64,000 nt of DNA, taken from the NCBI GenBank assembly GCA_010909165.1, contig MU008151.1, forward strand, positions 186,001 through 250,000. Direction: 5' to 3'. Source of the stretch: Anthoceros angustus. Its lineage: Eukaryota > Plantae > Anthocerotophyta. Shown here piece by piece: positions 2,176 through 55,050 of this stretch (positions are counted from its first letter, which is position 1; each line of letters begins with the position of its first letter). The translations under genes were made by a program, and so were the position numbers. The notes beneath the pieces were generated by a model, which had not been told where the DNA came from, made no database searches, and worked only from the letters and a program-made list of their open reading frames with translations.

Positions 2176-3330
2176 TTAGGGCTTGGCCTTGTCATCCTTT
2201 CCATAAGTCGGTGTGAACTGATTAGAGGATGGTGAATACCCTGAACCTGGGGTTGACGGTGAGTATCCGCCCGTAGTGGGGCTGCAATTTCCAACGCAAA
2301 CAAGAGTGAGAACTTTAAGTGATCTTCACAAACCACACAAAGAACTGCACCTTCAAACTGAACTATCCCTGAAAACTGTAAAACCCCAAGTCATACCTGT
2401 ACGGATGTTGCGCTGTCGGGCTATAACCAAGAGTGGATGGCGAGTACGAGGGACTGCACAAAAGAAAGGTTTTCAGTTTACTACTATCACGCAGAACATG
2501 TCTCAAAAGACGGACAGAAGCACAAAGTACAGTTCAAACTGATGGTTTGCAGACCTGGTAGGTGTCAGAGATGGAGCAGCCGGGCTGTAAGACGGGCTGG
2601 TGGGTGAGTAAGAGGGAGATGTTGGAGAATATGAAGGAGACGTCGGACTGCACACAGCAACGTAATATTAGGTTACTGGGACGAATCCACCGGTGATGAC
2701 CAACAACTTAACATTGCTGCTTGGAGATGAGTAAACAACTCATACCTGTAACTTGGTGAAGTGGGACTATACGCCGGGCTTGATGGTGAATATCTGGGAC
2801 TGCTTGGGGAGTAGACCGGGGAAGCAGGACTGTACCCAGGTGATGTTGGACTGTAACTTGGTGAGGTTGGACTGTAGCCAGGGGAAGTTGGACTGTAACT
2901 GTAGGCTGGAGAGGTCGGACTGTAGGTGGGCGACGTAGGACTATACGCTGGAGAGGTTGGGCTGTAACTCGGTGAGGTGGGACTATACGCAGGAGAACTT
3001 GGGCTATAACTTGGTGACGTGGGACTGTAACTCGGGGAGGTTGGGGAGTAAGACGGGCTTGTTGGAGAATAGGCTGGAGAAGTTGGACTGTACCTCGGGG
3101 ATGTAGGACTGTAAGACGGGGAAGTGGGACTGTAGGTGGGGGAAGTGGGACTGTACGAAGGAGAGGTGGGACTGTACGAAGGAGAGGTAGGGCTATAACC
3201 AGGAGATGTGGGACTGTAGCCTGGAGAAGTGGGACTGTAACCAGGAGAAGTAGGACTATACCCAGGGGAGGTTGGACTGTAGCCAGGGGAAGCTGGACTG
3301 TATCCAGGGCTTTGAGGGGAGAACTGCATG
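2176..3330 (-). repeat. RPB1 CTD heptad repeats (about 30 near-consensus plus about 5 degenerate), split by three introns
   Basis: Translation gives YSPTSP(S/G/A/T/R) arrays continuing through exons 11-13 and ending [13 protein letters not shown]. Confidence 0.9.
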
Positions 3331-6300
3331 CCAGAAACATAAGGTGAAAACTGAGCATCAGAGTGGGGTGAGGAGCGAATGCCGGGACTCAGCAGATAGC
3401 TTGGGGACATCGTAATATCATGGTGAGGTGTGCCAATCATTGGTGACCGCACAGGAGTCATGCTGAACTCCAGACCCTCTAGGTAGCTTGGCAGTTGCAA
3501 CTCAATGGCATGCTGCAACATGTTCTCCTTGAGCAGTAGACCAAAATCACCTGTCCCAATGGGTGCTAACTGCCCAAGCATGATATTTTCTGTCACGCCC
3601 CTGAGCTGGTCAGACTCCGCATAAACTGCAGCATCCAGCAGAATGTCCACTGTCTCCTCAAAAGAACATCGCATCATCGGACCTGTGTCATTGCGGTTGA
3701 TACCATGCCTTGTGATTGCCATAAGATGGCCACGGTAGGTCATGATGTCACACAATATAGCCAAATGCCGGTAGTTGACATAAGATCCATCAAAAGATAT
3801 GACGTCTCTAAGCTCTTTCAACAGAGCTTGCCGTACAGCCTCAATGCCGAGAACTTCAATCACCTCAATGAGATGATTGCTTGTGGTCCTGGTGGAATCA
3901 ACATCCTCATGACACATAACAGCTAACATGTTCACCCCCTCTGTATCCAGCATCCATTCCGTTTCTGGCTTGAATCCCTGAATTTCATCAAACTTGTTCT
4001 TTTTTGTCTCCCTAATGAAAACTTTCCTGATATCAGGGATGCCACGGAGAGCCATTTCTGTGAGCATGTTGCTTTCGATCTTCTTGAGGAAGACATCATC
4101 CTCACTTCGCTCTGGTGTTTCACCCTTAGGTGCTTCATCATTCATTATCCTGATTCGTAGAATCAGCTTTTCCGCATTGTCATCATTGAAGATACAGGCC
4201 AGATCGTCGTCAAACTCTATGTTGATCTTCTCTGCAATATCAGCCATGCTTAGTTTCTTGTCCACCATCATCTCCCTGTTTAATTGAACCCTAAGGAGCC
4301 ATGGCGATATCTTCTCAGGTGCCACATCCTCATCTGGCATTTCATAGTACGAGCGGACAAATTCAATGTCCTCATCAATTATGGTGCTCATTGGGTCTGG
4401 ATCATACCAGATCTCAGTGGCCTGTGTCACACTACGCAAGGTTGTGTACTCAAGAGCACACTGCACATTCTTAGCTTTCTCTTTTTCCTTATTTACTTCA
4501 GGCCTCAAATATACAGACAAAGAAGGAGTCTTGGTCTTCTTTGCAACATTTATAATCTCTCTCAACCTTGGCACTCCCAGGGTAACATTCTTTGCACTAA
4601 CACCAGCATAGTGAAAAGTATTCAGAGTCATTTGCGTCGCTGGCTCACCAATCGACTGAGCAGCAACACAACCAATCATCTCTCCGGGAGCAACCAGCGA
4701 CTGCAGAAAGCGCGCTTCTATCTCTCCAATAACCCACTCAAACGCTTCTTTAGTCAACCTCCACTCCTTCAACACTCGCTTGCTAGCTAACGTACTCCTT
4801 AGCAAGCAATTAAAAAACAAGGTGGAATTCTTCTGAGCCTCTGTACTGATTGCATCATCCCCTGAAACCACCTTCAACCGTTCTTGAAGCTTGTCAACAG
4901 CTTCCACAATTTCCATAGGATGCATATCTGATGGCTTTTTAAAATCCACCTTAAAAATCTTTTGGGCATTCCAAAGCAAACGCTTGAGATTCACAGGAAG
5001 TGGCCACATAGAATCCCCAGAAGGAGCAATCTCCAATCCAAGCTGTCTTCGGTCTGTCAACAGTTTTTGAACTTCAGCTTCAAAGACATTACGAAACTCT
5101 GGTATTGTCTTGATATCTTCTGCAGCCTCGGATGACATGTAGTCAGGGTTCCACGAGTCACTGTCCATCTCAAACTTGTAGACTCTGTCAAACTCTTTCA
5201 TCTTCATCTTCATAGAATCGAGCTTCTGAGATTCAATCCACACTGAATCCATACCATCTTCCCCATAAAGAAATTGTATGACATCACCCAGCGAATTCCT
5301 CACTGTTCCATCATACTTCACCATAACATCCTCCATGGCCTTTACTAGGCGCCTTTGGATGTATCCGGTCTCCGAAGTTTTCACTGCAGTGTCAATAAGA
5401 CCCTCCCTTCCTCCCATGGCATGGAAAAAGAATTCCTGGGGTGTCAGCCCTCTCAAGTAAGAATTCTCCACAAAACCACGACTCTCTGGACCGTAGTCAT
5501 CCTTTGTGAAATGTGGAAGGGTCCTGTCCACAAACCCATATGGTATCCGTTTCCCTTCCACATTTTGTTGCCCCACACAGGCAATCATTTGAGATATGTT
5601 AATGAAGGAACCCTTTGAACCTGCTGTCACCATAGCTTTGACGTTATTGCTCTCTGACAAGCTACGCTGAGCACTATTACCAGCTTCATCACGAGCCTTA
5701 TTGAGCACCTGCAGAAAAGCTTGTTCACTTAGTGCTGACGAACAATACAAAAGTGCAAAGAATAGAGACATTGTCTTGAAAGGATGCCAATTTCTCACCT
5801 GATTCACACGATTTTCAAAGGACTCCATCATTGAACGACCAGGCTGGGCTTCCAGCTGCTTTTCCTGTGCCTGCTTAATGAGCTCCTTCACTTCATTTTT
5901 GGCCTTTGCAATGGTCTCATTGATCTTCTCCATAGTGGAAGAATCTGCAATCGTATCTCCAATGCCAATGCTGAATCCTTGCTGCAATAGCCAGTAGTTT
6001 ACCAACCACTGTGTATGACCTAAAAACTTCCGAGCTGCATCTGGCCCCACTTCCTCCCTGATACGTGACAAAATGCGCACTTGATGACAGAGACTCAACC
6101 CGTGTACACATAAAACCAATGCAATAAGCAGGATAGGATTGAGAAGAGCGTCAAACTCACCAGATTACATGAATCAAACTTCCAGTGGATGTACCGAGGG
6201 TCTTCTTACAGAGAATGCCTGCCAAAAGCTCTCCCCTTTCAATTCGAACAATGGTGTCACCTACAGATATATCTCCAACCTCTGCGTCTGGATGCCACTG

Positions 6301-8788
6301 TGCCTGTCTCATGAGGTTTATCTGCTTTGGGATAATTAGCCCAAAAACCTGTTTCCCCGTCCACAAGGGTTTGGGCTTCAGAATAGTGGGAATTGGGATC
6401 TTGCCATCAAAATCTTCCCACCACATCAGAATATTCATGAAGATATCCTGGAAAACACACCGAGAGTTAATGTGAGCTGAGTAAAAGAGTCTTGAAAGCA
6501 CATATGAGCAAACCCCGGAAACTCAAGATTCACCTTCTCAATAAAGGTATCTCTTTTGGTGATCTTTCGACATCCTAATAGTGTGTCCTGCACAATCCCA
6601 ATGACTGGCCTGTTCGACTGTGGGGATACAATGCACTTAGGCACCATCATCAACTCTAGAACCTCTGCCCGAGTCTCAAATGATTGAGGGACATGCATAT
6701 TCATCTCATCCCCGTCAAAATCAGCATTATATGGGGATGTAACAGAAAGATTGAGCCGGAAGGTCGAATAAGGCATGATGAGTATCTTATGACCCATGAT
6801 GGACATTTTATGGAGACTGGGCTGACGGTTGAAGAGCACAAGGTCACCATCCTGTAGATGCCTCTCAACCTTGTAACCCAGCTCTAAATGACGATCACTG
6901 CTCTTTTTGAGAAACCGGAGGTCAAGGCGTTGCCCGTCCTCTCGAATAATATACTTTGCCCCAGTCTTCCCAGGAGGGGGATGAGGACCATATTCAACAA
7001 GCTCCTTCAACCTGGCAAGAACATCACAACATGTGAGAAATCCCAGTCGCATTACACCTAGCAAACGTGCATAGCGTAGAAGAAGCTGTTACCTCTCCAT
7101 GTTGTAGGGTGTCACAGTCTCTGGATACGTCAAATTGAGGGCAATACTCCATGGAACTCCAAGCTCATCAATGTTGATATTTGGGTCAGGAGTAATGACT
7201 GTTCGGGCTGAGAAGTCAACCCTTTTCCCCATTAGATTACCTCTGATGCGGCCTTCTTTTGCTTTCAGTCTTTGACAAATGGATTTGATGGGCCTCCCAG
7301 ATCTTTGGGTGGCCTGCAGGAACAGAGCTTGCCATGATATCAACCATACGACAGAACTTGGCAAAGCTACTCAAGTAGTCAAAACTCAGTTGCACTATTC
7401 CTCAATTTGAAAGACATACCCGTGGTTGGCCAGGCAAGTCATTGTCAAAGTAAGTTGCAATGTGAAACTGCAGCAGCTGGGCAAACTCGTTAATGATATG
7501 AGTGGGAGCCCCATTCTGCTCTTGCTTTTTGAGGTTGTTGTTATGACGAATGATCATGGCCAGTTGGTGAGTCAGATCATCCTAGGAAAAACCACGACAA
7601 AAATCAGCAGCACGCTTCAGATTCCTCCACATCCAGACACCGAAGTCAAGAAAACAGCTAACGTACGTTACGCTCAGAAGCCTAACCTCACTTCTTGCAG
7701 AGCTGTCCATCATGACAGACGGCCTCACAGGAGGTGGCGGGATTGGCAACACTTGCAGAATCAACCAATCGGGCCGGGCATACTTAGGGTTCAGACCAAG
7801 CAACATGCAGTCCTCATCGGTAATCCGCTTCAGAATGCTCAGCACCTGCTCGACAGAGCCCAACGCATTAGCACCCTGCCGTTCCCTCTAGCTTCCACGA
7901 ACCACTCCAACAAAATCATCAAGCACCTTCTCGGCACTGAGATGCGATTTCCTCTCAGCCGGCTCCGGCATGTACTGGTCCTGGTCCTGGTCGTTCTTCC
8001 TTTTGCTGGGCTTAAACTCCGCCACAATTTTCATCCCATCAATGCTAATCTTAGGCTGCTGCGCCCCACAACCCCCATGTCGCTTCTTTTTCTCTGTATC
8101 ATCCGCACCCAGCTCCTCCTCATTCTCGTCCCCCCCCTCGCACTTGGTCTTGGTCTTACAGCAATCCAAAACCCGTTTCATCCTCTGCTTCGGGTTCCGA
8201 ATCTTTTTGGCCAGCTTAAACCGGTGATCGTCCTGCCACACCCGACAAAACCCTGACCAGTCACTCCCCCAATACCTACTACTCCCTCACCCAAACCCTA
8301 AACCCAATTCCACACCCTACCTCGTTCGCGAGGCACCGCGAACAGTTGAAGCACACGCAGCGCAGTATCGAAAGCACGGTCTTCAAAAACCCAATATGAA
8401 ACATGGGCTTCGCCAGCTCCAGATGCCCGAAATGGCCAGGACACTCCGCCATACTCCCCGCACAGGTCTCGCACTTCACCTGCCGGTCAATTGTGCCTAG
8501 CTTGGGGTCGCTGAGCCCCCCAGCCTTGGCCTTCCCCCTGTCATAGGTCTCGCTGCTCTCAATTTTCACCACAGACATCTGACGCTGCAGGCATCCAAAT
8601 CACACCAGAACCCGACAGAAACAACAACACAACGTCAGTCCCGTCGACACCGCATCCCACCCCTGCCATTGCGCAAAGAGCCCAGCAGTCCACAGCATCC
8701 TCACAATTTCATCGGGACTAAGAATCCCGAACTGCACGCTTTGCACACGGGCAAGGTCCGCCGGCGAGAAGGAGAACCGCTGATCCAT
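2176..8788 (-). CDS. RPB1: DNA-directed RNA polymerase II largest subunit, 13 exons: 8788-8705, 8584-8321, 8232-7927, 7845-7687, 7581-7420, 7313-7093, 7011-6534, 6447-6161, 6057-5799, 5708-2746, 2647-2555, 2453-2397, 2281-2176
   Basis: Zn-site CETC...[20 protein letters not shown], catalytic NADFDGD, bridge helix [15 protein letters not shown] and trigger loop [16 protein letters not shown], plus a YSPTSPS CTD. All 12 introns have GT-AG ends that I traced in frame; stop TAA at 2176-2178. Confidence 0.97.
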
Positions 8789-9301
8789 CTTCTTCGCCGC
8801 GTCGCGTTCCCGCGGCGGCGCCTAGCGGAAATGGACCGATCTGCCGCGCTCCTGTAATACTTAAACGTCACGTTTTCGTGTCACTGGAATACCGAGGCAA
8901 TTAATTAGGTTAAAACTTCACTCTTTCAGTTTATGTTTATTCGGTGCAAGAAGGGATATTAAACACCATCACATACATACATATATAGATGTCCCACACA
9001 TGATCGCCAAAGTATCATAGCCGTCCCCGAAAGAAGCCCCGGAATGTCATATGGATGGGATGTATGGTGGAGTATTGCACACGAGTACATGACATCCCAT
9101 CTCTATTGTACGTGACATCCCATCTCTAGCATAGAATAACGCGCCTCGTCTCCCCGTCTTTGCCATATACTTCCACAACGAGCTTGCTTGTTGCCGGAAT
9201 TGAACGCTGGGAGGGAGGAGCTGCTTCCGGAGGGAATTCTTTGCGCCGGAAGCTTTGTGCTGCGAATTGCGAGTGTGATCGATCCAGCAGGAAGCGAGAG
9301 C
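8789..9301. promoter_or_regulatory. Putative bidirectional promoter between RPB1 and the penta-EF-hand gene
   Basis: Divergent ATGs 513 bp apart; 21-bp tandem duplication GTAC(A/G)TGACATCCCATCTCTA at 9085-9105 and 9108-9128. Confidence 0.5.
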
Positions 9302-10395
9302 ATGTCGTCCGATCCAGGGCTGACGCACGGGGCGCCGCCCACGGCACCGCCACAGCCATGGCCATCGGCGGCGTCGGGGTACGGGCAGCCGGGAGGCTAT
9401 ACAGGAGCAGCTCCGCCGGGGGGCTACGGGGCGGCGGGATACGATCCTGCGGCGGTCTATGGAGGATACGGGTCACCGGCATCTACGGGGGCCTATGGAG
9501 CTCAGACGGGGCCTCCGCGGTACGGGCAGCAGCAAGGGGCGGGCTACGGGCCGCCTGCTGGAGCTCCTCCGGCTCCCAGCGGGTATGGCCAGCCGGGGAC
9601 GGCATCCTACACGCAGGCCTCGGCTCCGCCTTACGCGGCTCCGGGGCCGGGGTACGGCCAGGCTCCGCCTGCTCCGCCTCCGCAGTACCCCGCCGGTATG
9701 GCCAGCCGCAGCCGCAGCAGGGGTATGGCGCGCAGCTAGGGTATGGCGGGCAAGGTCAGGGGCAGGGGCAAGGGCAGGGACAGCAGCAGCAGCCGTGGCT
9801 CCAGCCGCAGCAGTCTTTCGGTTACGGGGGATACGGGCAGCAGCCGGGTTACGGGTACGGGGTGGCGGAGCTCTTTCCTCCGGGGACGGACCCCGAGGTG
9901 ATCCGGATGTTCCAGCAGGCGGATCGGGACGGCAGCGGGCAGGTGGACGATGTGGAGCTGCAGAAGGTGCTGTCGGCGGCGCATCCCTTCAGCTTGCGGA
10001 CGGTTCATTTGCTGATAAACTTCTTCTCGGCCACCTGCTCGCTCAAGATCAAGCCTGTGGAGTTCGCTAATTTGTGGAAGAGCTTGAGGGACTGGAGAAA
10101 GATCTTTGACGAGCACGACCTGGACCGGAGCGGCAGGATGGATGTGAAGGAGCTCGGGAAAGCGCTGCTAAGCATGGGGTGTGCCGTGTCCGCGCCTTTG
10201 TTGAAGGTTCTTGTCACCAGATACGACCGGACCGGGCTTGCTAAGTCTATCGACTATGACAATTTTGTGGAGTGTTCCCTTGTTGTCAAGGGCCTGACTG
10301 ATAAGTTTAAGGAGAAGGATGTTCGGTTTCAGGGATCGGCGACTCTCACGTACGAGGAGTTCATGCTCATGGTGTTGCCGTTTGTGACAGCTTGA
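9302..10395 (+). CDS. Penta-EF-hand calcium-binding protein (peflin/ALG-2; plant CML49/50-like) with Gly/Pro/Tyr/Gln-rich N-terminus; apparent 1-nt frameshift near 9695
   Basis: EF loops DRDGSGQVDDVEL and DLDRSGRMDVKEL, FPPGTDPEV motif and C-terminal GSATLTYEEFMLMVLPF. The N-terminal GYGQP repeats run in one frame to 9694 and continue in the next (GCC GG TAT GGC, one G short). Confidence 0.88.
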
Positions 10396-10849: not shown

Positions 10850-11063
10850 TATATAGAGTATATGGAGATGATCACATAGTATATAGAGGTGATCACAGAG
10901 TATATGGAGATGATCACATAGTATATAGAGGTGATCACAGAGTATATGGAGGTGATCACAGAGTATATAGAGGTGATTATACAGAGTATACAGAGGTAAT
11001 GACAGCATATATAGAGGTAATCACAGAGTATAAAGAGATGACCACAAAATATGTGAAGTGATT
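10850..11063. repeat. 21-bp minisatellite (AGAGTATATAGAGGTGATCAC), resuming at ~19239-19290 after the LTR element
   Basis: Directly visible tandem units on both sides of the insertion. Confidence 0.85.
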
Positions 11064-11068
11064 ACAGA

Positions 11069-13557
11069 TGTGGCGCGACTTTCGCTGATGGCCAGCCGGG
11101 CGCGCACAATCCCGTGTCGTTGTAGGAAGGAGTTCGTTCCACAGGGAATGGTCTCGTGCTTATTCCGCACCGAGCTCTACAACCTATCGCTGAGCGGACT
11201 TCATCATGTTGGGTCCGGCTCCACAACCCTAAGTGTGTGGCCTCCACAACTCGTCGGACCAGACCACCGGACCTTCCAACAAACCCGCCGGGTTTCTCCA
11301 AGTACCGGAAAGGTTTAGCGACGCTGCCTCCGCCGATCTACGACTTGTGCCGGCCCAAAGACTCAACTCGTCCGCCAACTCCACCTCAACACACGCCGTA
11401 ATACCCGACCCTTCTCCTTATCCATTCTCACTGAGTCACAACACCCACACGCTGATGTATTCACACCAGCCGCCTTTGCCCTTCCTACCGCTTCACGCTC
11501 ATGGAGAAGTAGCTTGCACTGCAACCCCACTGCTCCAGCAGCCTCCAAGGATGGCTTCCGCCCACAGTCGCCCCAAGCGCCTCTAATCCCTCCTACCGCT
11601 TCATGCTCATGGAGAAGTAGCTGCACTGCAACCCCACAGCCTGCTCCAGCAGCCTCCAAGGATGGCTTCCACCCAGTCACCCCAAGCGCCCTAATCCTCC
11701 TACCGCTTCACGCTCATGGAGAAGTGGCTTCAGCTGCATCCCCACACCTGCTCCAGCAGCCTCCAAGGTTAGTCTCGCACCCGAGAAATCACCCGCGAGC
11801 ACCTCCAGCTCAGTCCGACCCCGCCGCACCCATCAAGCGTGTTGGCGGAGCTCTCGCCACCGAGCTCTAAACACATCCCTCTACCACCAATTAATCGCAC
11901 GGACGCAGAACTCACTCCGCCTCGAGCACAAGGCAAGAGCACACGGAGCGCCAAGATGGTACGGATAGTCCGCCTTGGACGCCAGCCTTCCTATATACTC
12001 CCATACCCTAACCTAACCCGCCTATGTATGTATCCTAACCGCTATGTATGTACCCTAACTGGTCGTGGTAACGCCGGACGTAGCTCATCATCACCGGACT
12101 TCTTGCACCAATCGCCAAACAAGAGATCCATGCCAGCGATGCCCACCAAACTAAACCACCGGACCTCGCCCGACGGACCACTCGTCGGACCTCGCCCGAC
12201 GGACCACCGGACCTCTCAAGGACGGACCACCGGACCTTCCAACAAACCCGCGCCTTTGTTGAAGGTTCTTGTCACCAGATACGACCGGACCTCGCCGGAC
12301 CTCGCCCGACGGACCACTCCGCCGATCTCGTACTCTAGCGGCCCAGACTCCTCAACTCGTCCGCCAACTCCACCTCAACACACCGCCGTGCCGACCCTTC
12401 TCCTTATCCATTCCCCCGGTGGTCACAACACCCACACGCCGATGTATTCACACCGGCCGCCTTTGCCCTTCCTACCGCTTCACGCTCATGGAGAAGTAGC
12501 TTTGCGAACCTACACCACCGTTCAGCCTCCAAGGATGGCTTCCGCCAGTCGCCCCAGCGCCTCTAATCCCTCCTACCGCTTCATGCTCATGGAGAAGTAG
12601 CTGCACTGCAACCCCACAGCCTGCTCCAGCAGCCTCCAAGGATGGCTTCCACCCAGTCACCCCAAGCGCCTCCTAATCCTCCTACCGCTTCACGCTCATG
12701 GAGAAGTGGCCCAGCTGCATCCCAGCCTCCGTTCAGCCTCCAAGGTTAGTCTCGCACCCGAGAAATCACCCGCGAGCACCTCCAGCTCAGTCCGACCAGT
12801 GCACCCATCAAGCGTGTTGGCGGAGCTCGTCACGAGCTCTAAACACATCCTCTACCACCAATTAATCCTCGCACGGTGACGCAGAACTCACTCCGCCTCG
12901 AGCACAAGGCAAGAGCACACGGAGCGCCAAGATGGTACAGGATAGTCTTGGCTCGACGCCTTCCTATATACTCCCATACCCTAACCTAACCCGCCTATGT
13001 ATGTATCCTAACCGCTATGTATGTACCCTAACTGGTCGTGGTAACGGGACGAGCTCATCATCACCGGACTTCTTGCACCAGCCTCGCCAAACAAGAGATC
13101 CATGCCAGCGATGCCCACCAAACTAAACCACCCAGACCACTCCGACCTCGCCGGACGGACCACCCCGCCGACCTCTCAAGGACGGACCACCCGCCTGACC
13201 GCCCGGACGGACCACTCCTGGCCGGACCTCGCCCGACGGACCACCCGCCGACCGCCCGACGGACCACCGGACCTCGCCGGACCTCGCCCGACGGACCACC
13301 CGCCCGCCCGGACGGACCACTCCGGACCTCGCCGGACGGACCACTCCGGACCTCGCCCGGACGGACCACTCCGCCGACCGCCCGGACGGACCACTCGTCG
13401 ACCGCCCGACGGACCGAGGGTCTAGGGATTGCACAAGTGCAATCCGCCAAAAATGGCCTTATTGGCTAACTCCTCCCTATCCCTCTTAACAGTAACGACC
13501 CGAAAAAAAAGCAAAACAAGCCGCCAAGAGTACGGACATCGGATTTGGCACTCCACA
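11069..13557 (-). repeat. 3' LTR, enlarged by an internal ~960-bp tandem duplication
   Basis: Same sequence as 17695-19238; 11262-12224 is repeated from 12225, with junction homology GACCACCGGACC. Confidence 0.85.
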
Positions 13558-13573
13558 TACTCCCCTTCTCATC
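13558..13573 (-). other. Polypurine tract
   Basis: Minus strand reads GATGAGAAGGGGAGTA immediately followed by the LTR start TGTGGAGTG. Confidence 0.85.
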
Positions 13574-14435
13574 TGTTGGCGGCCTCGCCAACACCCCAGG
13601 CAATACTCCGCTCTTTCCGTCGGGCTCTCCCCTTCTCATCTTTTACTACCTCCTCAGGTGTCAGCAAGTCCGGCAACATTGGGAACCTTTTTTACCAAGA
13701 TTCATCCTCCGTTGAGGATGAGTCGCCCTCCTCCTCCGAGGTTGATGTGTCGTCCTCCCCAGCGCCCGTGGTCATCTTCTTTCTCCCTTTGTGCATGCTG
13801 GGCCTCCCGCTAGATTCGCACCCTCGGCGTCCGGTCCTGTGCAACCTCCCTACTTCTGTATACTCCACAAACTGCCCGACTATTACACCCATCCGCAACC
13901 GCAATCTGGCAGCCGTCCTACTCCTACCTACTAACTCAGGCAGCAGTCCACAACAATTCCACCCCAAGGCGCAAAAATGTGGCGCGACTTCATGGATGTA
14001 GGCGCACAATCCGTGTCGTTGTGGTATGAGTCCGTTCCCAAGAGAATGATAGCTCCGTTGCCGCCCGATTCTCACCTTTCTCGGGTCCACTTCACCTTAA
14101 CACACTCAATCCTAGTTTACACCCTATTTATAACGTTCACGAGCAGGCCGGCGTGGCCAAGCGTTTAAGGACCCGTTTGCGTCACTTCATTCGTCACTCG
14201 TTTCTTGATCCGTTCCTCTCATCGCTCTCTCTACACTTATCAACCTTGGAAAGAACGGGTGGCTACAGGGCCAGACCTCCTCGTTGCTCCCGGCCTCTCC
14301 GGCTCACACCTCCCGGGCCACACGCTCCCGGTCCTGACGTTGGACCGCCGCCTCACGCGACGGGTCCCCGACCGTCCTTCCTCGCACACACCACCACACG
14401 TTAAGTCCGTCACGGGACCTTGATCCGCCTCCCGA

Positions 14436-14493
14436 GTCGTTGTAGTATAGTGGTATTCGCCGCCACGCGGGTGACCCGATTCGATCGGCGCCA
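14436..14493 (+). tRNA. tRNA-Asp(GTC) copy with encoded CCA, internally deleted
   Basis: GTCGTTGTAGTATAGTGGT..ATTCGCC.GCCACGCGGGTGACCCG.TTCGATC..GGCGCCA matches plant cytosolic tRNA-Asp as I recall it, apart from short deletions. Confidence 0.8.
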
Positions 14494-14980
14494 AAAATGT
14501 GGCGCGACCACCGATGGATGTACCGCGCACAATCCCGTGTCGTTGTGGTATGGAGTCCGTTCCCAAGAGAATGATAGCTCCGTTTGCCGCGCTTCAGCCG
14601 ATTCTCACCTTTCTCCGGGTCCACTTCACCTTAACACACTCAATCCTAGTTTACACCCAGCTATTTATAACGTTCACCGAACAGGCCCGGCGTGGCCAAA
14701 CGTTTAAGGACCCGTTTGCGTCACTTCATTAAATCCTCGTTTCTTGATCCGTTCCTCTCGCTCTCTCTACACTTATCAACCTTGGAAAAAACGCAGATCA
14801 GGACCTCCTCGTTGCTCGCCGGCCTCTCCGTCCGGCTCGCACACCTCAAGTACCTCCGGCTCACACGTTCGGTCCGCTCGGCGTTGGACCGCCGCTCTCG
14901 AACAAGGGTCCTCGTCGTCCTTCCTGCACACACCACCACACGTTAAGTCCGTCACGGGACCTTGATCCGCCTCCCGAGTC

Positions 14981-15046
14981 GTCGTTGTAGTATAGTGGTA
15001 AGTATTCCTGTCACGGGTGACCCGTTCGATCCTCGCAACGGCGCCA
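14981..15046 (+). tRNA. tRNA-Asp(GTC) copy with encoded CCA, best-preserved copy
   Basis: GTCGTTGTAGTATAGTGGTAAGTATTCCTGTCACGGGTGACCCGTTCGATCCTCGCAACGGCGCCA: D-arm/A-box, anticodon loop CTGTCAC, TTCGA loop and acceptor end CAACGGCGCCA. Confidence 0.88.
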
Positions 15047-15524
15047 AAATGTGGCGCGACTTTCGATGGATGTACGCGCACAATCCGTGTCGTTGTGGTA
15101 TGGAGTCCGTTCCCAAGAGAATGATAGCTCTTTCAGCTTGATTCTCACCTTTCTACGGGTCCACTTCACCTTAACACACTCAATCTTCGTTACACCCAGC
15201 TATTTATAACGTTCAAACAGCCCGTGGCCAAACGCGTTTAAGACCCGTTTGCGTTTCGTCCTGCGTCACCGTTTCTCTCACCGTTCCTCTCATCGCCTCT
15301 CTACACTTATCAACCTTGGAAAGAACGCAAGTGGCTACATGGGTGACCTCCTCGTTTGTTCACGCCTCTCCGTCCGGCTCACACACCCTCCCGTACCTCC
15401 GGCTCACACGTTCGGTCCGCTCGGCGTTGGACCGCCGCTCTCGAACAAGGGTCCTCGTCGTCCTTCCTCGCACACACCACCACACGTTAAGTCCGTCACG
15501 GGACCTTGATCGATCTCCCGAGTC

Positions 15525-15586
15525 GTCGTTGTAGTATAGTAAGTATTCTCAGTCCACGCGGGTGACCGGAGATTCGATAGCGGCAA
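15525..15586 (+). tRNA. tRNA-Asp copy, more degraded
   Basis: GTCGTTGTAGTATAGT.AAGTATT...CACGCGGGTGACC..TTCGAT..GCGGCA, at the same position relative to the unit. Confidence 0.7.
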
Positions 15587-17673
15587 AATGTGGCGCGACT
15601 TTCCGATGGCCAGGCGCGCCACAATCCCGTGTCGTTGTGGTATGAGTCCGTTCCCAAGAGAATGATAGCTCCGCTTTGCCCGATTCTCACCTTTCTACGG
15701 GTCCACTTCACCTTAACACACTCAATCTTCGTTTACACCCAGCTATTTATAACGCTTCACCGAACAGCCCGTGGCCAAACGCGTTTAAGGACCCGTTTGC
15801 GCTTCATTCACTGCTTTTCTTGCCCTCTCATCGCTCTCTACACTTATCAACCTTGGAAAGAACGCAGAGCACGCCCTCCCACGTTGCTCCCGGCCTCCGT
15901 CCGGCTCAGACACCTCCCGTACCTCCGGCTCACACGCCCTCCGGCGTTGGACCGCCGCTCTCGACGAACAAGGGTCCTCGTCGTCCTTCCTCGCACACCA
16001 CCACGTTAAGTCCGGGCCTGTGACCTTGACCGCCTCTCCGTCGCCGTGCTCGCACTCGGGACTCGCGTTAGCAAGAAGACGCCCAAGGGTGCAAGAACGC
16101 ATCAACACCAAGAGAAAGATACTTTACTAGAGCGGCCTCATTTCTTATACTACGCCCAAGGTCGGCGTCTTTATTACACCTATTACGGTGATGGCTACCA
16201 AGATGCCCTAATCGCCGCCTACCATCCTATTTCCTCCCCTATCTCCTTCGTCAGGTGGAATGGGTTCCGCCGGATGGGTGGTCCAATCTCCGTCTCACAG
16301 CTTGTGGCGCTCCCAATCGGATGATCCGTGAGGCGGGCCCTCCTCTCTCCGGAATCCTGTCGGGTTGGGCTACCGGGGCCAAGGCCGACAACCACGGCGT
16401 CATCCTCCCCAGCCTCCCACAGGTCCCTCGCCGGGGCCATTCACTCCCTAGCGTAAGTCGGCGGGGCTCCTCATGCCGCAGCGGGACCTCGAGGTCTGCC
16501 TCGACTCAACTCGTGAGTCCGCTATTTCCGAGTCCGCCGGGTCCGACCTTGTCTGGGTCCGGACCTCGGTCCCGTCTTCCGAGGTCCCACGACTCCGCAA
16601 GCAGATGAGAAGGGAGTATGTGGAGTGGCGATACTTCCTTCGGTACCGAGGCCCGCCGAAGGACCCCTTGGAACATTTGGATGAGTCATGCATCCGATCC
16701 CTCCCCATTGAAGTTCGGCGCGACACGAAATCCTCCACGGTTTCACTCTCTCCTTCTTACCTCCAAAGAGGGAGTACGCTGCTTGGTCGACGTTGTTGCC
16801 ATCGTCGCCCGGCAAAGTTTGAGGAACCGCCCCTACTTCCGGCGTGGTGCTACTTCTTCCTCACGATCCGACAAGTCCACCGCACTTACCTGTGGTGTCC
16901 TCGCCTCGAGCTCGTTGCCACGTGCTACGGGCGCTCGCGCACAACGTCCGGCTCTCTTAGCAATTCCCCTTAACACCTCACGCCCTCCACGATCCACGCT
17001 TTACCAACGATTTCATTCCCAACGGCGCCAAAATGTGCGCGACTTTCCGATGGCCAGCGCGACAATCCCGTGTCGTTGTAGGAAGGAGTTCGTTCCACGT
17101 GGAATGGTCTCGTGCTTATTCGCCTCGAGCTCTACAACCTATCGCTGAACGGACTTCATCATGTTGGGTCCGGACCTCGGTCCGGTCTTCCTTCGAGGTC
17201 GGGCGACTCATGTAGCAGATGAGAAGGGAGTATGTGGAGTGGCGATACTTCCTTCGGTACCGAGGCCCGCCGAAGGACCCCTTGGAACAGCTGGATGAGC
17301 TGTGCATCCGATCCCTCCCCATTGAAGTTCGCTCGCGACACGAAATCCTCCACGAAGGTTTCAGCGTCTCTCTCCTTCTTACCTCCAAAGAGGGAGTACG
17401 CTTGCTTGGTCGACGTTGTTGCCATCGTCGCGCCCGGCAAAGTTTGAGGAACCGCTCCCCTTACTTCCGCCTGGCGTGGTGCTACTTCTTCCTCACGATC
17501 CGACAAGTCCACCGCACTTACCCGTGGGCTGGTGTCCTCGCCTCGAGCTCGTCGTCTTTCACGTGCCTGCGCTCGGAGCGCTCTGGCGGTCACAACGTCC
17601 GGCTCTCTTAGCAATTCGTCCTTAACTACCTCACGTCCTCCACGCATCCACGCTTGCTACGGAACGATTTCAT

Positions 17674-17691
17674 TCCCCGGCAACGGCGCCA
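17674..17691 (-). other. Primer-binding site complementary to the 3' 18 nt of tRNA-Asp
   Basis: Minus strand TGGCGCCGTTGCCGGGGA, 3 nt after the 5' LTR end; this is the canonical Athila-type PBS. A deleted duplicate lies at 17017-17030. Confidence 0.92.
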
Positions 17692-17694
17692 AAA

Positions 17695-19238
17695 TGTGCG
17701 CGACTTTCCGATGGCCAGGCGCGCCACAATCCGTGTCGTTGTAGGAAGGAGTTCGTTCCACGAGGAATGGTCTCGTGCTTATTCGCCTCGAGCTCTACAA
17801 CCTATCGCTGACGGACTTCATCATGTTGGGTCCGGCTCCACAACCTAAGTGTGTGGCCCTCCACAACTCGTCGGACGGGGCGCGCACCCGGACCTTCCAA
17901 CAAACCCCGCCTCGCCCAACCGACAGGTTTGCGACGCTGCCTCGATCCACGTACTCTAGCGCCAAGACTCCTCAACTCGTCCGCCACAACTCCACCTCAA
18001 CACACACGCGTAACACCCTTCTCCTTATCCATTCCGGCCCGAGTCACAACACCCACACGCCGATGTATTCACACCGCCTTTGCCCTTGGTGCTTCACGTT
18101 GCGGAGTAGCTTTGCACTGCAACCCCTGACCACCGTTCAGCCTCAAGGATGGCTTCCGCCCAGTCGCCCAAGCGCCTCCTAATCCTCCTACCGCTTCACG
18201 CTCATGGAGAAGTAGCTTTGCGACCGCAACCCCCATGCGCCCACCTGCCCGTTAGCCTCCAAGGATGGCTTCCGCCAGTCACCCCAAGCGCCTCCTAATC
18301 CTCCTACCGCTTCACGCTCATGGAGAAGTGGCTTGCACTGCATCCCCACGACCTCCGTTCAGCCTCCAAGGTTAGTCTCGCACCCGAGAAATCACCCGCG
18401 AGCACCTCCGAGCTCAGTCCGACCGGCCACCACCCATCAAGCGTGTTGGCGGAGCTCGTCACGAGCTCTAAACACATCCTCTACCACCAATTAATCGCAC
18501 GGTGACGCAGAACTCACTCCGCCTCCTCGAGCACTCAAGGCAAGAGCACACGGAGCGCCAAGATGGTACCGGATAGTCTGCCTTGGACGCCAGCCTTCCT
18601 ATATACTCCCATACCCTAACCTAACCCGCCTATGTATGTATCCTAACCTCGCTATGTATGTACCCTAACCTGGTCGTGGTAACCACGGACGTAGCTCATC
18701 ACTCACCGGACTTCTTGCACCAAGCTCGCCAAACAAGAGATCCATGCCAGCGATGCCCACCAAACTAAACCACCGCGAGACCACTCGTCGGACCGCCCGG
18801 ACGACCACCGTCGGACCTCGCCGGACAGACCACCCGCCGGACCTCGCCGACGGACCACTCCGTGACCGCCCGGACGACCACTGCCGACCGCCCGGACGGA
18901 CCACTCAGACCGCCGACGGACCACCCGACGCCCGACCAGACCACTCACGGACCTCACCGGGACGGACCACTCCGCCGGACCGCCGACGGACCACCCGCCG
19001 GACCTCGCCCGACGGACCACCGCCGACCGCCCGGACGGACCACTCCGTGACTCGCCCGGACGGACCACTGGTCCGACCTCGCCCTGACGGACCGAGGGTC
19101 TAGGGATTGCACGTAAGTGCAATCTGGCCGAAAATGGCCTTATTGGCTAACTCCTCCCTATCCCTCTTAACAGTAACGACCCGAAAAAAAAGCAAAACAA
19201 GTCGCCAAGAGTACGGACATCGGATTTGGCACTCCACA
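17695..19238 (-). repeat. 5' LTR (~1.54 kb) with GGACCAC-rich U3 minisatellite, TATA near 18600 and ~100-bp U5 repeats
   Basis: Homology to the left LTR; TG...CA ends; adjacent PBS. Confidence 0.88.
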
Positions 19239-19542
19239 ACAGAGTATATAGAGATAACCATAGAGTATGTAGAGGTGACCACAAGTCACATGCTTATCCA
19301 CAAGAGGTAAACACAAGTCATATGTTTATCCACAAAAGTTATAGCGATCTATCAGGGTTAGCCATCTATAATTGTTATGCCTAACCATAAGAGTTATGAC
19401 TATCTACTAGAGTTATGGCTATCCACAAGAGTTATAACAAGCTTAGGTGGTAAGAGCTTTTAGAGCCCAGATTAGCCACGCCAGCTTTGTTTTGTTAGCA
19501 CACCTCAAAGGTGTACAGCCATCTACAATTGTTATGCCTAAC

Positions 19543-28344: not shown

Positions 28345-29720
28345 GTGATCATTATTTTCCTGTTTCGAAACTCCTATATAATATTTTCTTTAAAATCCCA
28401 GGCAGAGAGGTCTCCTTCTAGTTGTTGCAGACTGGGATGGTTGTTTTTCAACCTGGTTCTGCCCCTGGCCAGCAGGGGGTTCACCTGGTTGTGCACATTT
28501 CCAGCAGGGGGGCTCAGATACTTGTGTTGCAAGGTTGATTGTTGATCATTTTGGAAATGGTTCTGCCCATGGCCGGCAATGGGCTTAATTGTGCGAGGCT
28601 GATAAAAGCAGCAATTGGCTAGCTGTATTCGACGGGCGCGGGATGGGTGCAAAGTGAGATAGATGTGATCTATGGCAATGTTCCAAGATTTACCGGTGGG
28701 GATCACGAGACATGAGATTTTTCAGAACTTCACGTGTTTATGTAGAGCTTGAAGTTCTGCTAATAGGTGGAATTGCCTTCTAAGTATGGCCTGGGTAAGA
28801 AGAGTGACCACTTGAGAGCTAAGGGGCACAACTTCTCTTGTGGGAGTTTCATGTTAACTGCAATCTTACATTTTGTGGTTCCGACATTGCTTTGGGGAGT
28901 GGGTTCTACTCGGAGCACTAGTTGGTTAGCATTGCTGATGTTGGCACCAAACACGTTTCGGAATCATGAATGGGCTTGGGCTGGCCATGCACAGCCTGAT
29001 GGCCTGTGCCACTGGGGTGTGGAACGAAATCCATTCCAAGCCTTCATCTGCAGCCTTAAGGGTGTCTACTTGGCCAATCCCATCTATTTTAGGTTAGGTT
29101 GGTTTTTTCTGCACCGTGGTAGCTGGAAATTCCTCACAGGCTCGGCTGCTTGTTTCCTGCTGGATAGGGTTTTGAGGATGCCATGGATTTAAAGGATTGG
29201 TCTGTGCCCGACTTGTTGTGAAATTCATCGTGGTACCATAGGAACTCTCAGGTCAGGTCTTCCCCTTCCATTTTTGCAAATGACCGTTCATGAACATAAG
29301 AAGCCATGGCATGAATTCGGGTTTATTAGCTTTCAGCAGTTTCCTAAGGCTGGGTCTGTGCAGGCACCATTTCGTCGAATGATGGCTGGGAATGGATATC
29401 TTCTGCATCACCACAATCAAATCAGATTGAATTGAATTAGCTGCCCAGCATGGCAGGCTGGTACCAGTGTCATGTACATACGCACATAGGTAAGGTTGTT
29501 CGAGTGTCAATCATTCACTAGTAGTACAAATCTCTATTTGTGGCATCAAAGTCTGGCAAGTCTGGGCTCAGGTACGGCATACGAGATAGCTAAACTCACA
29601 AGTCCTCTTGACTGATGAGAAGAGAGCTGTCCCTACTACAGTTATAACTCCTTACAATTTTGGACTTAAGCCTGCAAACAATCTTGGTTCTTCTCAAAAC
29701 CCTCATGAAGTGCAGTTGTT
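28345..29720 (+). pseudogene. Mosaic of PPR-like fragment, sulfiredoxin genomic fragment (29055-29390) and a block shared with 48860-49250
   Basis: Colinear similarity to 49570-50470 and 48860-49250; SRX exon/intron sequence such as GGGTGTCTAC, CGTGGTACCATAGGAACTCTCAGG and TGCAGGCACCATTTCGTCGA. Confidence 0.65.
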
Positions 29721-48169: not shown

Positions 48170-48330
48170 AATGAACCTTGCACAAGTATCAGAGCCCACC
48201 TGCTGGGCAGAACCAGGTTGAGCTGTCAACCTTGCACAATTATCTGAGCCCCCTGCTGGCCATGGGCCGAACCATGTTGAGCATGATCAACCTTGCACAA
48301 TTATCTGAGCTTCCCTGCTGGCCATGGGCA
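48170..48330. repeat. About 63-bp tandem repeat x2-3 (CAACCTTGCACAATTATCTGAGC...CTGCTGGCCATGGG); mirrored at 49680-49840 and 55060-55190
   Basis: Directly visible. Confidence 0.75.
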
Positions 48331-49479
48331 GAACCAGGATGAACAATCAACCACCCCAGTCTGCAACAACAGAAGGAGACATCTCTGCCAGGCATGTTAT
48401 TGAATACATTATTTAGGAGTTTCGAAACAGGAAAATAATGCAATTGCACACACCTTGAGAAGGCAAGAAAGTAACTTGGTTTCCCACAATAAAGCCTTCC
48501 TCCTCCATTTGTCCATATATTTTTGTTCCAGTGGTTCAATGCGAACCGAGTAATCCTGTGAGAGACGCTGTTAGAGAGGTCCTCAACTCTCAACAGCTTT
48601 TTCGTTCTTGGGTAATTAGGCGCCCCATGGCCAACCAAGCGACGATCCCTAACCAGTGCCAACGACAAGCTTGCTTCTTCCTTTGCCCCAACTCTTCGTT
48701 GCTTGCATTTGAAGAACTGGTCCATCATCCATTAGCTGACTTCACAGAGTACAGGTTCGGGAGTGTGGACATCACAGGACTTCAAGGTCAAGGCTTTTGA
48801 GAAGAACCAATTGCTTTCAGACTTACCTCCAAACTTGCAAGGACTCTATGGTTTTTATTTTGTAGCAATTCTTAAAGGCTTGGTCTGTGCAGGCACCACT
48901 TCGTTGAATGATGGCTGGGAATGGACATCTTCTACATCACCGCAATCAAATCAAATTGAATTGAATTAGCTGACGGCAGGCTGGTACCATTGTCATGTAC
49001 ATACGCACATGGTAAGGTTGTTCGAGTGTCAATCATTTATTAGTAGTACAAATCTCGATTTGTAGCATCAAAGTCTGGCAAATCTGGGCTCAGGTACTGC
49101 ACACGAGATAGCTAAACTCACAAGTCCTGCTGACTGATGAGAAGAGCTGTCACCTACTACAGTAGTAACTCCTTACAAGTTTGGAGGTAAGTCTGAAAGC
49201 AATTGGTTCTTCTCAAAAGCCTTGACCTTGAAGTCCTGTGATGTCCACTCCCGAACCTGTACTCTGTGAAGTCAGCTAATGGATGATGGACCAGTTCTTC
49301 AATGCAAGCAACGAAGAGTTGGGGCAAAGGAAGAAGCAAGCTTGTCGTTGGCACTGGTTAGGGATCGTCGCTTGGTTGGCCATGGGGCGCCTAATTACCC
49401 AAGAACGAAAAAGCTGTTGAGAGTTGAGGACCTCTCTAACAGCGTCTCACAGGATTACTCGGTTCGCATTGAACCACTG

Positions 49480-54687: not shown

Positions 54688-55050
54688 GGCTGGTCGCCGC
54701 TCTCGGCAGTCTTCACCTCGGACGGGTAGCCACTGGAGGCTCGTCTGCATTTCACACAAACCAGAAGCGAATTATCCTCTTTGTTGGGAACCCACTTACA
54801 GTCTGACTTGTCCTCCACGGGTTTCTCCTTCAACAAAGGAGTAGTCCATGACTTGGATTTCGACGTTCCCTGCACGGCCCACTTGGACTTGCAGATCTCA
54901 TCGCCATGGTGCTGGGTCACTGGGTCCTTACCTGAGCCGCCCTGGGGATGAGGATACCAAGGTGCAGATTTTCAGGATGCTCAGGATGCTCGTATTGAGG
55001 ATGTTCGGCATGCTCACGAGCTACCGCTTCCGAATAAGGATGACGCCAAC

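What the first reader, a model, noticed from the sequence alone, without database searches (positions are those of the whole stretch)
13978..16043. LTR retroelement carrying a tandem array of its own full-length, CCA-ended primer tRNA fused to LTR ends
Seen: on + the pattern is [LTR-end unit]-[tRNA-Asp...CCA]-AAA(A)-[TGTGGCGCGAC LTR-end unit], three times. The three tRNA copies have largely non-overlapping deletions and together rebuild almost the whole plant tRNA-Asp(GTC), while the true 5' LTR has only the normal 18-nt PBS. Established: eukaryotic tRNA genes do not encode CCA; Athila elements prime on tRNA-Asp; RT normally copies only 18 nt of the primer and stops at m1A58; tRNA + CCA + the complement of the LTR end is the structure of the primer attached to minus-strand DNA; a strong-stop-DNA origin for tRNA-derived SINEs has been proposed. 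Inference: RT read through the whole primer, then jumped upstream at GTCG homology (unit 4 has GTCG at 16040-16043 exactly where the others start the tRNA), and the cassette was amplified. The element may therefore carry Pol III A/B boxes antisense to its RNA, able to yield its own primer or a tRNA pre-extended into U5. Its sense RNA would carry three full-length anti-tRNA sites. I know of no described element with a primer-tRNA array, but could not search. TATA-like motifs in the units suggest they include some U3, so they are not pure strong-stop DNA.
Basis: partly seen in the sequence, partly recalled or inferred. Interest (0 to 1): 0.92.

Follow-up and report, generated by a model that had tools for sequence, protein, structure and literature searches.

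The report
Primer tRNA array in plant retrotransposon
A defective LTR retrotransposon of a non-seed land plant holds four tandem ~540-bp repeats, three of them joined by DNA copies of the whole tRNA-Asp that primes its reverse transcription; this is most likely a fossil of reverse transcriptase running through its primer and jumping back, not a working tRNA gene.

Summary
The array is real. Four ~540-bp units lie at 13978-16043. At three junctions a unit is followed by a tRNA-like stretch (58, 66 and 61 nt), an A3-4 spacer, and the same 11-mer that ends the host element's LTR. The host is an 8.2-kb, gene-less LTR element on the minus strand (11069-19238), with TG..CA LTRs, a 5-bp target duplication, a PBS and a PPT. 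Its true 5' LTR carries only the short Athila-type PBS. The tRNA is Asp: GTC is readable at the anticodon in two copies, and the 5' end pairs with the PBS-type 3' end.

The best reading is that plus-strand DNA synthesis copied the whole primer, then switched template at a GTCG microhomology. The array was integrated with the element, because the units are as diverged from each other as the two LTRs are.

The functional ideas are not supported:
- No copy is called a tRNA gene.
- None folds as a cloverleaf.
- There is almost no Pol III terminator.

Only the first 80-110 nt of each unit resemble the LTR. Athila membership cannot be tested. No relatives could be retrieved, so this is one locus. 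Base-level quality is doubtful, because the differences are indel-rich and patchy. I found no described precedent. I rate it a new variant of a known aberration, of moderate interest.

The parts
11069..19238 (-). Whole non-autonomous LTR element (8170 bp). It is flanked by 5-bp target duplications (ACAGA at 11064-11068 and 19239-19243) and is inserted in a ~21-bp satellite.
   Evidence: no Pfam domain in its ORFs; ORF 17159-17647 has no homologue
17695..19238 (-). 5' LTR (1544 bp), TGTGG..CCACA termini
11069..13557 (-). 3' LTR (2489 bp). It carries an internal ~990-bp tandem duplication (11328-12323 / 12317-13304) that the 5' LTR lacks.
17679..17694 (-). Genuine PBS (13-mer, 17679-17691) plus 3-nt A/T spacer next to the 5' LTR
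   Evidence: same 13-mer given as the ATHILA PBS for tRNA-Asp/Asn
16554..17173 (-). Second copy of U5 end (17034-17173), spacer, PBS (17018-17030) and leader/ORF. It is a tandem duplication of 17165-17835, with 8-nt microhomology at the joint.
13978..16043 (-). Array of four ~540-bp units. LTR-like parts are at 13978-14435, 14498-14977, 15050-15521 and 15589-16039. GTCG at 16040-16043 marks the outer edge.
14436..14497 (+). tRNA-Asp copy 1 (58 nt, ends CCA) plus AAAA spacer; shortened by internal indels
14981..15049 (+). tRNA-Asp copy 2 (66 nt, ends CCA) plus AAA spacer. It matches Rfam tRNA model positions 1-71 at 19.3 bits. It is preceded by an extra GTC.
15525..15588 (+). tRNA-Asp copy 3 (61 nt, CCA incomplete) plus AAA spacer; preceded by an extra GTC
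13962..13977 (-). Short PBS-like stretch plus A4 spacer beside unit 1. In the element's sense, the last unit is followed by an ordinary short PBS, not a tRNA copy.
13560..13574 (-). Polypurine tract just upstream of the 3' LTR
14124..14132 (-). TATA motif (exact 9-mer, minus strand), also at 14661, 15200 and 15743. It lies ~150 nt before each unit's LTR-type end.
11116..11125 (-). U5 box: a 10-mer identical to the first 10 nt of the tRNA copies. It is exact at 11116, 17072 and 17735, and has one mismatch at 14015, 14539, 15089 and 15631.
   Evidence: 11 hits against 2.45 expected

Best explanation
The array is a fossil of aberrant reverse transcription, carried inside a rearranged, gene-less (LARD-like) LTR retrotransposon of a non-seed land plant.

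Shown:
- In the element's sense (minus strand) the order is [about 470 nt ending in an LTR-type U5 terminus]-TTT-[complement of the whole tRNA-Asp(GTC), CCA included]. This occurs three times.
- A fourth unit follows, ending in a short PBS-like stretch (12 nt as it stands) rather than a tRNA copy.

Inferred:
- Plus-strand strong-stop synthesis copies the minus-strand DNA and then the primer still attached to it. Here it did not stop after about 18 nt at the modified base of the T loop, but ran to the 5' end of the tRNA.
- The new 3' end then paired at a GTCG microhomology about 470 nt upstream on the same template, and the segment was copied again.
- Either this cycle repeated, or one such duplication was later expanded by unequal exchange.
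- The last round stopped normally and allowed strand transfer.
- The units come from an LTR variant that shares only its terminal 80-110 nt with the host LTR. The cassette therefore probably entered by recombination with, or nesting of, a related element that uses the same primer.

As it stands the cassette is inert. It is neither a tRNA gene nor a demonstrated primer source.
For: - Junction anatomy: a tRNA-like stretch, CCA (two of three), A3-4, then the LTR-terminal 11-mer. This matches the genuine PBS junctions at 17679-17705 and 17018-17044.
- The 5' 7 nt of the copies pair with the PBS-type 3' end as an acceptor stem. Copy 2 spans tRNA model positions 1-71. GTC is readable at the anticodon in two copies.
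- The 5' 19-mer is a plant small RNA reported in 25 papers.
- Genes do not encode CCA (established knowledge), so the source was mature tRNA.
- GTCG lies at the outer edge, 16040-16043.
- The last unit in sense is followed by a short PBS-like stretch and a leader-like stretch.
- The units are 80-84% alike and the LTRs 85% alike, so the array is about as old as the insertion.
- A second microhomology-joined duplication of U5-PBS-leader lies in the same element.
- Literature: m1A58 is needed for the plus-strand stop (PMC8599865). Primer tRNA sequence is found inserted at 2-LTR junctions (PMC5618025). Non-chromovirus elements often hold tandem repeats in non-coding regions (PMC6317226).
Against: - There is one locus only. 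No relative could be retrieved, so neither independence of origin nor inheritance is tested.
- About 370 nt of each unit has no demonstrable LTR origin.
- The array is not at the element's own 5' LTR, so an extra recombination or nesting step must be assumed.
- A 10-nt homology between the tRNA 5' end and U5 exists but was not the site used for the jump.
- No tool-supplied reference tRNA-Asp gene was available. Two of three copies fail the tRNA model.
- Differences within the element are unusually rich in 1-2-nt indels and are patchy, so base-level detail may be unreliable.
Confidence: 0.7

Rival explanations
1. Circle-junction origin. An aberrant linear cDNA kept a copy of its primer at the U5 end and was ligated end to end (a 2-LTR-type junction, LTR-tRNA-LTR). 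The joint was later recombined into an element and amplified.
For: Primer tRNA sequence at 2-LTR junctions is documented for retroviruses, often with terminal deletions. The U5 end-spacer-tRNA order is the same.
Against: The sequence after each tRNA copy does not match the start of the LTR, so a large U3 deletion is needed. The same truncated edge at all three joints, and the GTCG at the outer edge, fit a template switch better.
Confidence: 0.12
2. Adaptive module. The cassette is kept because it works. Its sense RNA offers several long primer-binding sites or decoys for 3'-tRNA fragments, or its antisense strand is transcribed by Pol III into a primer or a pre-extended primer.
For: Three long anti-tRNA sites plus three short PBS sites lie in one transcript-sense strand. 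An exact TATA motif is kept in all four units. A conserved U5 box complementary to the tRNA 5' end shows that the family has more contacts with the primer than the PBS alone.
Against: No copy is called as a tRNA gene. None folds as a cloverleaf. There is one T4 run on the tRNA strand in about 2 kb. All copies are shortened. The element has no genes, is rearranged, and is known from a single locus.
Confidence: 0.08
3. Assembly or sequencing artefact. The copy number, or the array itself, is produced by mis-joined or poorly polished long reads.
For: Within the element there are about 58 gap openings per 71 mismatches, mostly 1-2 nt, with transitions fewer than transversions. An equally old repeat pair elsewhere in the window has 7 per 135. 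Two further two-copy tandem duplications lie in the same element.
Against: The same composite junction recurs three times with different local differences. Differences are patchy, with exact runs of 68-114 nt, and the units share 2:2 variants. This is not uniform read noise. The flanks and nearby genes are clean.
Confidence: 0.07
4. Captured tRNA genes or a tRNA-headed SINE inserted next to LTR fragments, unrelated to priming.
For: tRNA-like sequences inside LTR elements exist (Helenus/TRIMp3).
Against: The copy is the element's own primer species. It ends in CCA and abuts the LTR terminus through the same spacer as the PBS. It has no leader, trailer, tail or target duplication of its own. In Helenus the tRNA-like part lies inside the LTR and is not complementary to the PBS.
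Confidence: 0.03

Closest known systems
Athila-type (non-chromovirus Ty3/gypsy) plant LTR retrotransposons
   Same: An identical 13-nt PBS shared by tRNA-Asp/Asn, and a 3-4-nt A/T spacer between LTR end and PBS. A 5-bp target duplication. Tandem repeats in non-coding internal regions are common in non-chromoviruses.
   Different: There is no gag, pol or env-like ORF, so the lineage cannot be placed. The LTR terminal pentamer differs from the Brassicaceae one. The repeat units here are LTR end plus a whole primer copy, which those papers do not describe.
Primer tRNA sequence inserted at retroviral 2-LTR circle junctions
   Same: A DNA copy of the primer joined to the U5 end, ascribed to faulty primer removal or stop (PMC5618025). 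The m1A58 stop is documented (PMC8599865).
   Different: Those are unintegrated by-products in infected cells and usually hold short pieces. Here whole-length copies sit three times in a chromosomal element of a plant and are followed by an internal LTR position, not an LTR start.
Helenus / Cassandra / Ajax (TRIMp3): LTR elements with a small-RNA-derived Pol III promoter
   Same: A non-autonomous LTR element that holds tRNA-like sequence.
   Different: In those, the small-RNA part lies inside the LTR, in sense, and comes from a SINE or gene. In Helenus it is explicitly not complementary to the PBS, and the elements are 0.3-1.3 kb. Here the tRNA is the primer itself, sits at the PBS position, is antisense to the element, and the element is 8.2 kb.
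Strong-stop-DNA model for the origin of tRNA-derived SINEs (Ohshima and Okada; from my own knowledge, not retrieved)
   Same: On the plus strand each unit reads tRNA-CCA, then the complement of U5 and beyond. This is the layout that the model starts from.
   Different: There is no dispersal, no tail and no own target duplication. The units include a likely promoter region upstream of R, so they are not pure strong-stop DNA.

Membership tests
LTR retrotransposon (structural definition) | Two direct LTRs with TG..CA termini and a target-site duplication | tested here: met
   LTRs at 11069-13557 and 17695-19238, about 85% alike, with TGTGG..CCACA termini. ACAGA lies on both flanks.
LTR retrotransposon (structural definition) | [quoted passage not shown] | tested here: met
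   PBS at 17679-17691; PPT at 13560-13574.
LTR retrotransposon (structural definition) | gag-pol coding capacity (autonomy) | tested here: not met
   No Pfam domain in 10 ORFs of the internal region. The 162-aa ORF has no homologue among 1.8 billion representatives. The element is non-autonomous.
Athila lineage | RT/RH/INT phylogeny within the non-chromovirus Ty3/gypsy elements | not testable with these tools
   The element has no pol, and no relatives were retrieved.
Athila lineage | Conserved PBS 13-mer (tRNA-Asp/Asn) after an AT-rich 3-6-bp spacer | tested here: met
   Exact 13/13 match at 17679-17691, with a 3-nt spacer.
Functional tRNA gene | Passes tRNA covariance or heuristic detectors and folds as a cloverleaf | tested here: not met
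   ARAGORN finds none, even at 80% thresholds. Rfam gives 19.3 bits against 29 for one copy and nothing for two. No cloverleaf forms.
Functional tRNA gene | CCA not encoded; T-run terminator just downstream | tested here: not met
   CCA is encoded in two of three copies. Only one T4 run lies on the plus strand of the array, 230 nt after copy 3.
Helenus / TRIMp3 | tRNA-like sequence inside the LTR, in sense, unrelated to the PBS; element 0.3-1.3 kb | tested here: not met
   Here the tRNA lies outside the LTR-like part at the PBS position, is antisense, and includes the PBS complement. The element is 8.2 kb.
tRNA-derived SINE | Dispersed single units with own target duplication and 3' tail | tested here: inconclusive
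   Within the window the units occur only in the array and have no tail. The rest of the genome could not be searched.
2-LTR circle junction with primer insert | U5 end, primer copy, then the intact start of U3 | tested here: not met
   The first two parts are present. The sequence after the tRNA does not match the LTR start.

The most novel reading that the evidence does not exclude
The cassette is not a one-off. In this reading it is a heritable module of a living family in this plant lineage. Units with their own TATA promoter and U5 end, each followed by a full-length primer-binding site, expand and contract through reverse-transcriptase template switching. They could also shed tRNA-headed, U5-tailed units, which would be the strong-stop route to tRNA-SINEs caught midway.
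Probability: 0.12. Interest if true: 0.85.

Novelty: new variant of a known kind. Interest (0 to 1): 0.55.

Why it matters
If the base-level sequence holds up, this locus shows four things.
- It is chromosomal evidence that a plant reverse transcriptase can copy its whole primer tRNA past the modified T-loop base in vivo, and that such a product can still be integrated.
- It identifies the primer directly as tRNA-Asp(GTC). The PBS alone cannot separate Asp from Asn.
- It gives a concrete intermediate for the old idea that tRNA-headed retroposons arise from strong-stop products.
- It shows one way in which the tandem repeats common in non-chromovirus elements can be seeded.

As a single decayed locus it says nothing yet about function.

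Tried and rejected
Searches for relatives, all blank:
- A metagenome scan for the tRNA-end/spacer/LTR-end junction gave 107 loci. None shares more than 37 nt with the element, so all are chance matches.
- The tRNA 5' 19-mer is absent from viral and prokaryote genome collections, so I had no tool-supplied reference tRNA-Asp gene.
- The 162-aa ORF after the PBS looked gag-like by eye, but it has no homologue and no Pfam match. I dropped that reading.

Ideas tested and dropped:
- I first took the indel-rich differences for raw long-read noise. Exact runs of 68-114 nt, over-dispersed windows and shared 2:2 variants rule out uniform noise. The cause stays open.
- An apparent extension of the normal PBS into the T loop is not above shuffles.
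- A PPT-like stretch near 16221-16240, which might have marked the start of the unit-type LTR, has no supporting homology.

Full report
HOST AND CONTEXT. The window is nuclear DNA of a land plant outside the seed plants. A 1148-codon exon of RPB1 at 2673-6119(-) is at best 86% identical to RPB1 of a lycophyte (Diphasiastrum) and of liverworts (Marchantia, Calypogeia). It is not human and not a virus of animals. No protein in the database matches at 100%, so the species itself is not in the collections I could search.

THE ELEMENT. Self-comparison and reading of the ends define one LTR element on the minus strand, 11069-19238.
- The 5' LTR is 17695-19238.
- The 3' LTR is 11069-13557. It is longer because of an internal ~990-bp tandem duplication.
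- The termini are TGTGG..CCACA.
- A 5-bp duplication, ACAGA, lies on both flanks. The insertion site is a ~21-bp satellite.
- Next to the 5' LTR, after a 3-nt A/T spacer, lies a 13-nt PBS (17679-17691). It is letter for letter the PBS that a 2026 preprint gives for ATHILA elements, shared by tRNA-Asp and tRNA-Asn and separated from the LTR by an AT-rich 3-6-bp motif.
- A polypurine tract (13560-13574) precedes the 3' LTR.
- The 4.1-kb internal region has no recognisable gene. Ten ORFs give no Pfam domain. The 162-aa ORF after the PBS has no homologue among 1.8 billion representative proteins.
The element is therefore non-autonomous (LARD-like). Its lineage cannot be placed beyond 'uses the Athila-type PBS'. 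tRNA-Asp priming is typical of non-chromovirus Ty3/gypsy elements, which often carry tandem repeats in non-coding regions.

THE OBSERVATION. Four direct units of ~540 bp start at 13978, 14498, 15050 and 15589. Each begins on the plus strand with the 11-mer that is the reverse complement of the LTR's 3' terminus. Between units 1/2, 2/3 and 3/4 lie tRNA-like stretches of 58, 66 and 61 nt, followed by A4, A3 and A3 and then the 11-mer.

Several lines show that these are copies of one tRNA and cover it from end to end.
- The first 7 nt pair with the PBS-type 3' end as an acceptor stem in the folds of copies 2 and 3.
- In a targeted search, copy 2 aligns to Rfam's tRNA model from position 1 to 71, at 19.3 bits and E = 0.035.
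- The first 19 nt are a small RNA listed in 25 plant papers, under names such as miR6300.
- GTC is readable in the anticodon position of two copies. This decides for Asp against Asn.
- CCA is complete in two of three copies.
- The genuine 5' LTR has only the short PBS, and so does a second U5-PBS copy at 17018-17173.
- At the outer edge of unit 4 the letters GTCG (16040-16043) stand where the other units meet the tRNA.

What the observation overstates:
- All three copies are shortened by internal indels.
- ARAGORN calls none, even at 80% thresholds.
- Rfam finds nothing in a 4-kb scan, and nothing for copies 1 and 3 even when each is searched alone.
- None folds into a cloverleaf.
- Only the first 80-110 nt of a unit resemble the host LTR end. 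The remaining ~370 nt are not above shuffled controls against the LTRs or against the sequence upstream of the array.

ANATOMY IN THE ELEMENT'S SENSE. Read on the minus strand from 16043 down, the order is:
1. unit 4, TTT, anti-tRNA
2. unit 3, TTT, anti-tRNA
3. unit 2, TTTT, anti-tRNA
4. unit 1, TTTT, then a short PBS-like stretch (13962-13973) and about 25 nt that resemble the normal leader
5. about 380 nt, the PPT and the 3' LTR
Each unit holds an exact TATA 9-mer about 150 nt before its LTR-type end, as an LTR promoter would. The units therefore look like the 3' ~470 nt of an LTR variant that shares only its terminus with the host LTR.

MECHANISM. A DNA copy of a primer tRNA can arise only when plus-strand synthesis copies the tRNA still attached to minus-strand DNA. 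Normally this gives the 18-nt PBS copy and stops at the modified A58 (established knowledge; for the experimental support, for the general scheme).

The array is what one expects if that stop failed. On this reading the nascent strand ran to the tRNA's 5' end. It then re-paired at GTCG about 470 nt upstream on the same template and copied the LTR end and the primer again. The last round stopped normally. This accounts for:
- the flush tRNA 5' ends
- the CCA
- the spacer and terminus identical to those of the PBS junction
- the microhomology at the outer edge
- the ordinary PBS after the last unit

Whether three rounds happened in one reverse transcription, or one duplication was later expanded by unequal exchange, cannot be told. 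The units are 80-84% alike and the two LTRs about 85% alike. The array is therefore about as old as the insertion, and is not a recent local expansion.

A second microhomology-joined duplication (U5 end-PBS-leader, 16554-17173 against 17165-17835, 8-nt overlap) and the duplication inside the 3' LTR show that this copy went through several such events. Because the unit body differs from the host LTR, an extra step is needed: recombination with, or nesting of, a related element that uses the same primer.

FUNCTION. Nothing supports a working tRNA gene or a self-made primer. The detector and fold results are given above. In addition, the tRNA strand has a single T4 run in the whole array, so there is no Pol III unit of normal size. 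The sense RNA would indeed carry three long anti-tRNA stretches plus three short PBS sites. Whether that matters is untested.

SEQUENCE QUALITY. Differences between repeated parts of this element are unusual. There are about 58 gap openings per 71 mismatches, mostly of 1-2 nt, with fewer transitions than transversions. An equally diverged repeat pair elsewhere in the window has 7 gap openings per 135 mismatches.

I first read this as raw long-read noise, but that does not hold. The differences are patchy: there are exact runs of 68-114 nt, and the spread between windows is more than twice the binomial expectation. The units also share 40 two-against-two variants, against 139 singletons. Partial mis-polishing of a methylated multi-copy repeat, or real indel-rich decay, both remain possible. 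The pattern of what is missing in each tRNA copy should not be interpreted.

COMPARISON WITH WHAT IS KNOWN.
- Primer tRNA sequence at retroviral 2-LTR junctions is known. Here, however, the tRNA is followed by an internal LTR position, not an LTR start.
- Helenus, Cassandra and Ajax are LTR elements with tRNA- or 5S-derived parts. In those elements the small-RNA part lies inside the LTR and in sense. It is derived from a SINE, and in Helenus it is explicitly not complementary to the PBS.
- Tandem repeats in non-coding parts of non-chromovirus elements are common, but none is described as LTR end plus primer.
- In ten full-text searches I found no chromosomal array of primer tRNA copies. The library omits most subscription journals, and Repbase and Dfam could not be queried.

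LIMITS.
- No relatives were found.

VERDICT. The read-through-and-jump origin is the best-supported reading (about 0.7). The functional claims and the Athila label are unsupported or untestable. I rate it a new variant of a known kind of reverse-transcription error, preserved in a genome, with interest 0.55.

Noticed in passing
11116-11125, 17072-17081, 17735-17744; 14015, 14539, 15089, 15631 (one mismatch): Every U5 copy holds, about 40-48 nt inside the LTR end, a 10-mer identical to the first 10 nt of the tRNA copies (11 hits against 2.45 expected). In the element's RNA this is a second site complementary to the 5' strand of the primer's acceptor stem, which is freed when the 3' strand binds the PBS. 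It may be an extra primer contact, like those known in Ty1, Ty3 and retroviruses (comparison from my own knowledge).
   Followed up: partly
16601-16629 and 17211-17240 (+) against 13547-13575: The leader/ORF region holds, in inverted orientation, a ~28-nt near-exact copy of the PPT/LTR-start junction, present in both copies of the duplication. In the RNA it could pair the 5' region with the PPT-U3 junction, a long-range 5'-3' contact reminiscent of Ty1 CYC5/CYC3 (from my own knowledge). It could also be a relic of an inverted fragment.
   Followed up: partly
16554-17173 against 17165-17835: A tandem duplication of the U5 end (140 nt), spacer, PBS, leader and ORF start. It is joined at an 8-nt microhomology (GGGTCCGG) and gives the element a second complete PBS junction.
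   Followed up: partly
11328-12323 against 12317-13304: A ~990-bp tandem duplication inside the 3' LTR only. The two LTRs therefore differ in length by about 945 bp.
   Followed up: no
11069-19238: Differences between repeated parts of this element are dominated by 1-2-nt indels and are patchy, unlike other old repeats of the window. The cause is unresolved: partial mis-polishing or a real indel-rich decay.
   Followed up: partly
10850-11068 and 19239-19300: The element sits in an AT-rich satellite with a period of about 21 bp, which continues on both sides of the insertion.
   Followed up: no
12470-12745, 13135-13415, 18105-18371, 18779-19093: GC-rich minisatellites (periods about 25, 55 and 109 bp) lie inside the U3 part of both LTRs.
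   Followed up: no
48196-48790 and 55046-55638: A pair of ~600-bp direct repeats, about 99% identical and 6.85 kb apart. It is probably a young LTR element, and large ORFs inside it gave no Pfam match.
   Followed up: no
28519-28612 (+): ARAGORN calls a 94-nt tRNA-Pro(TGG), the only tRNA gene called in the window. Its length suggests an intron or a false call.
   Followed up: no
2673-7064 (-) and 9160-10395 (+): Host genes next to the element: RPB1 (a very long exon with CTD heptads) and an EF-hand protein.
   Followed up: partly
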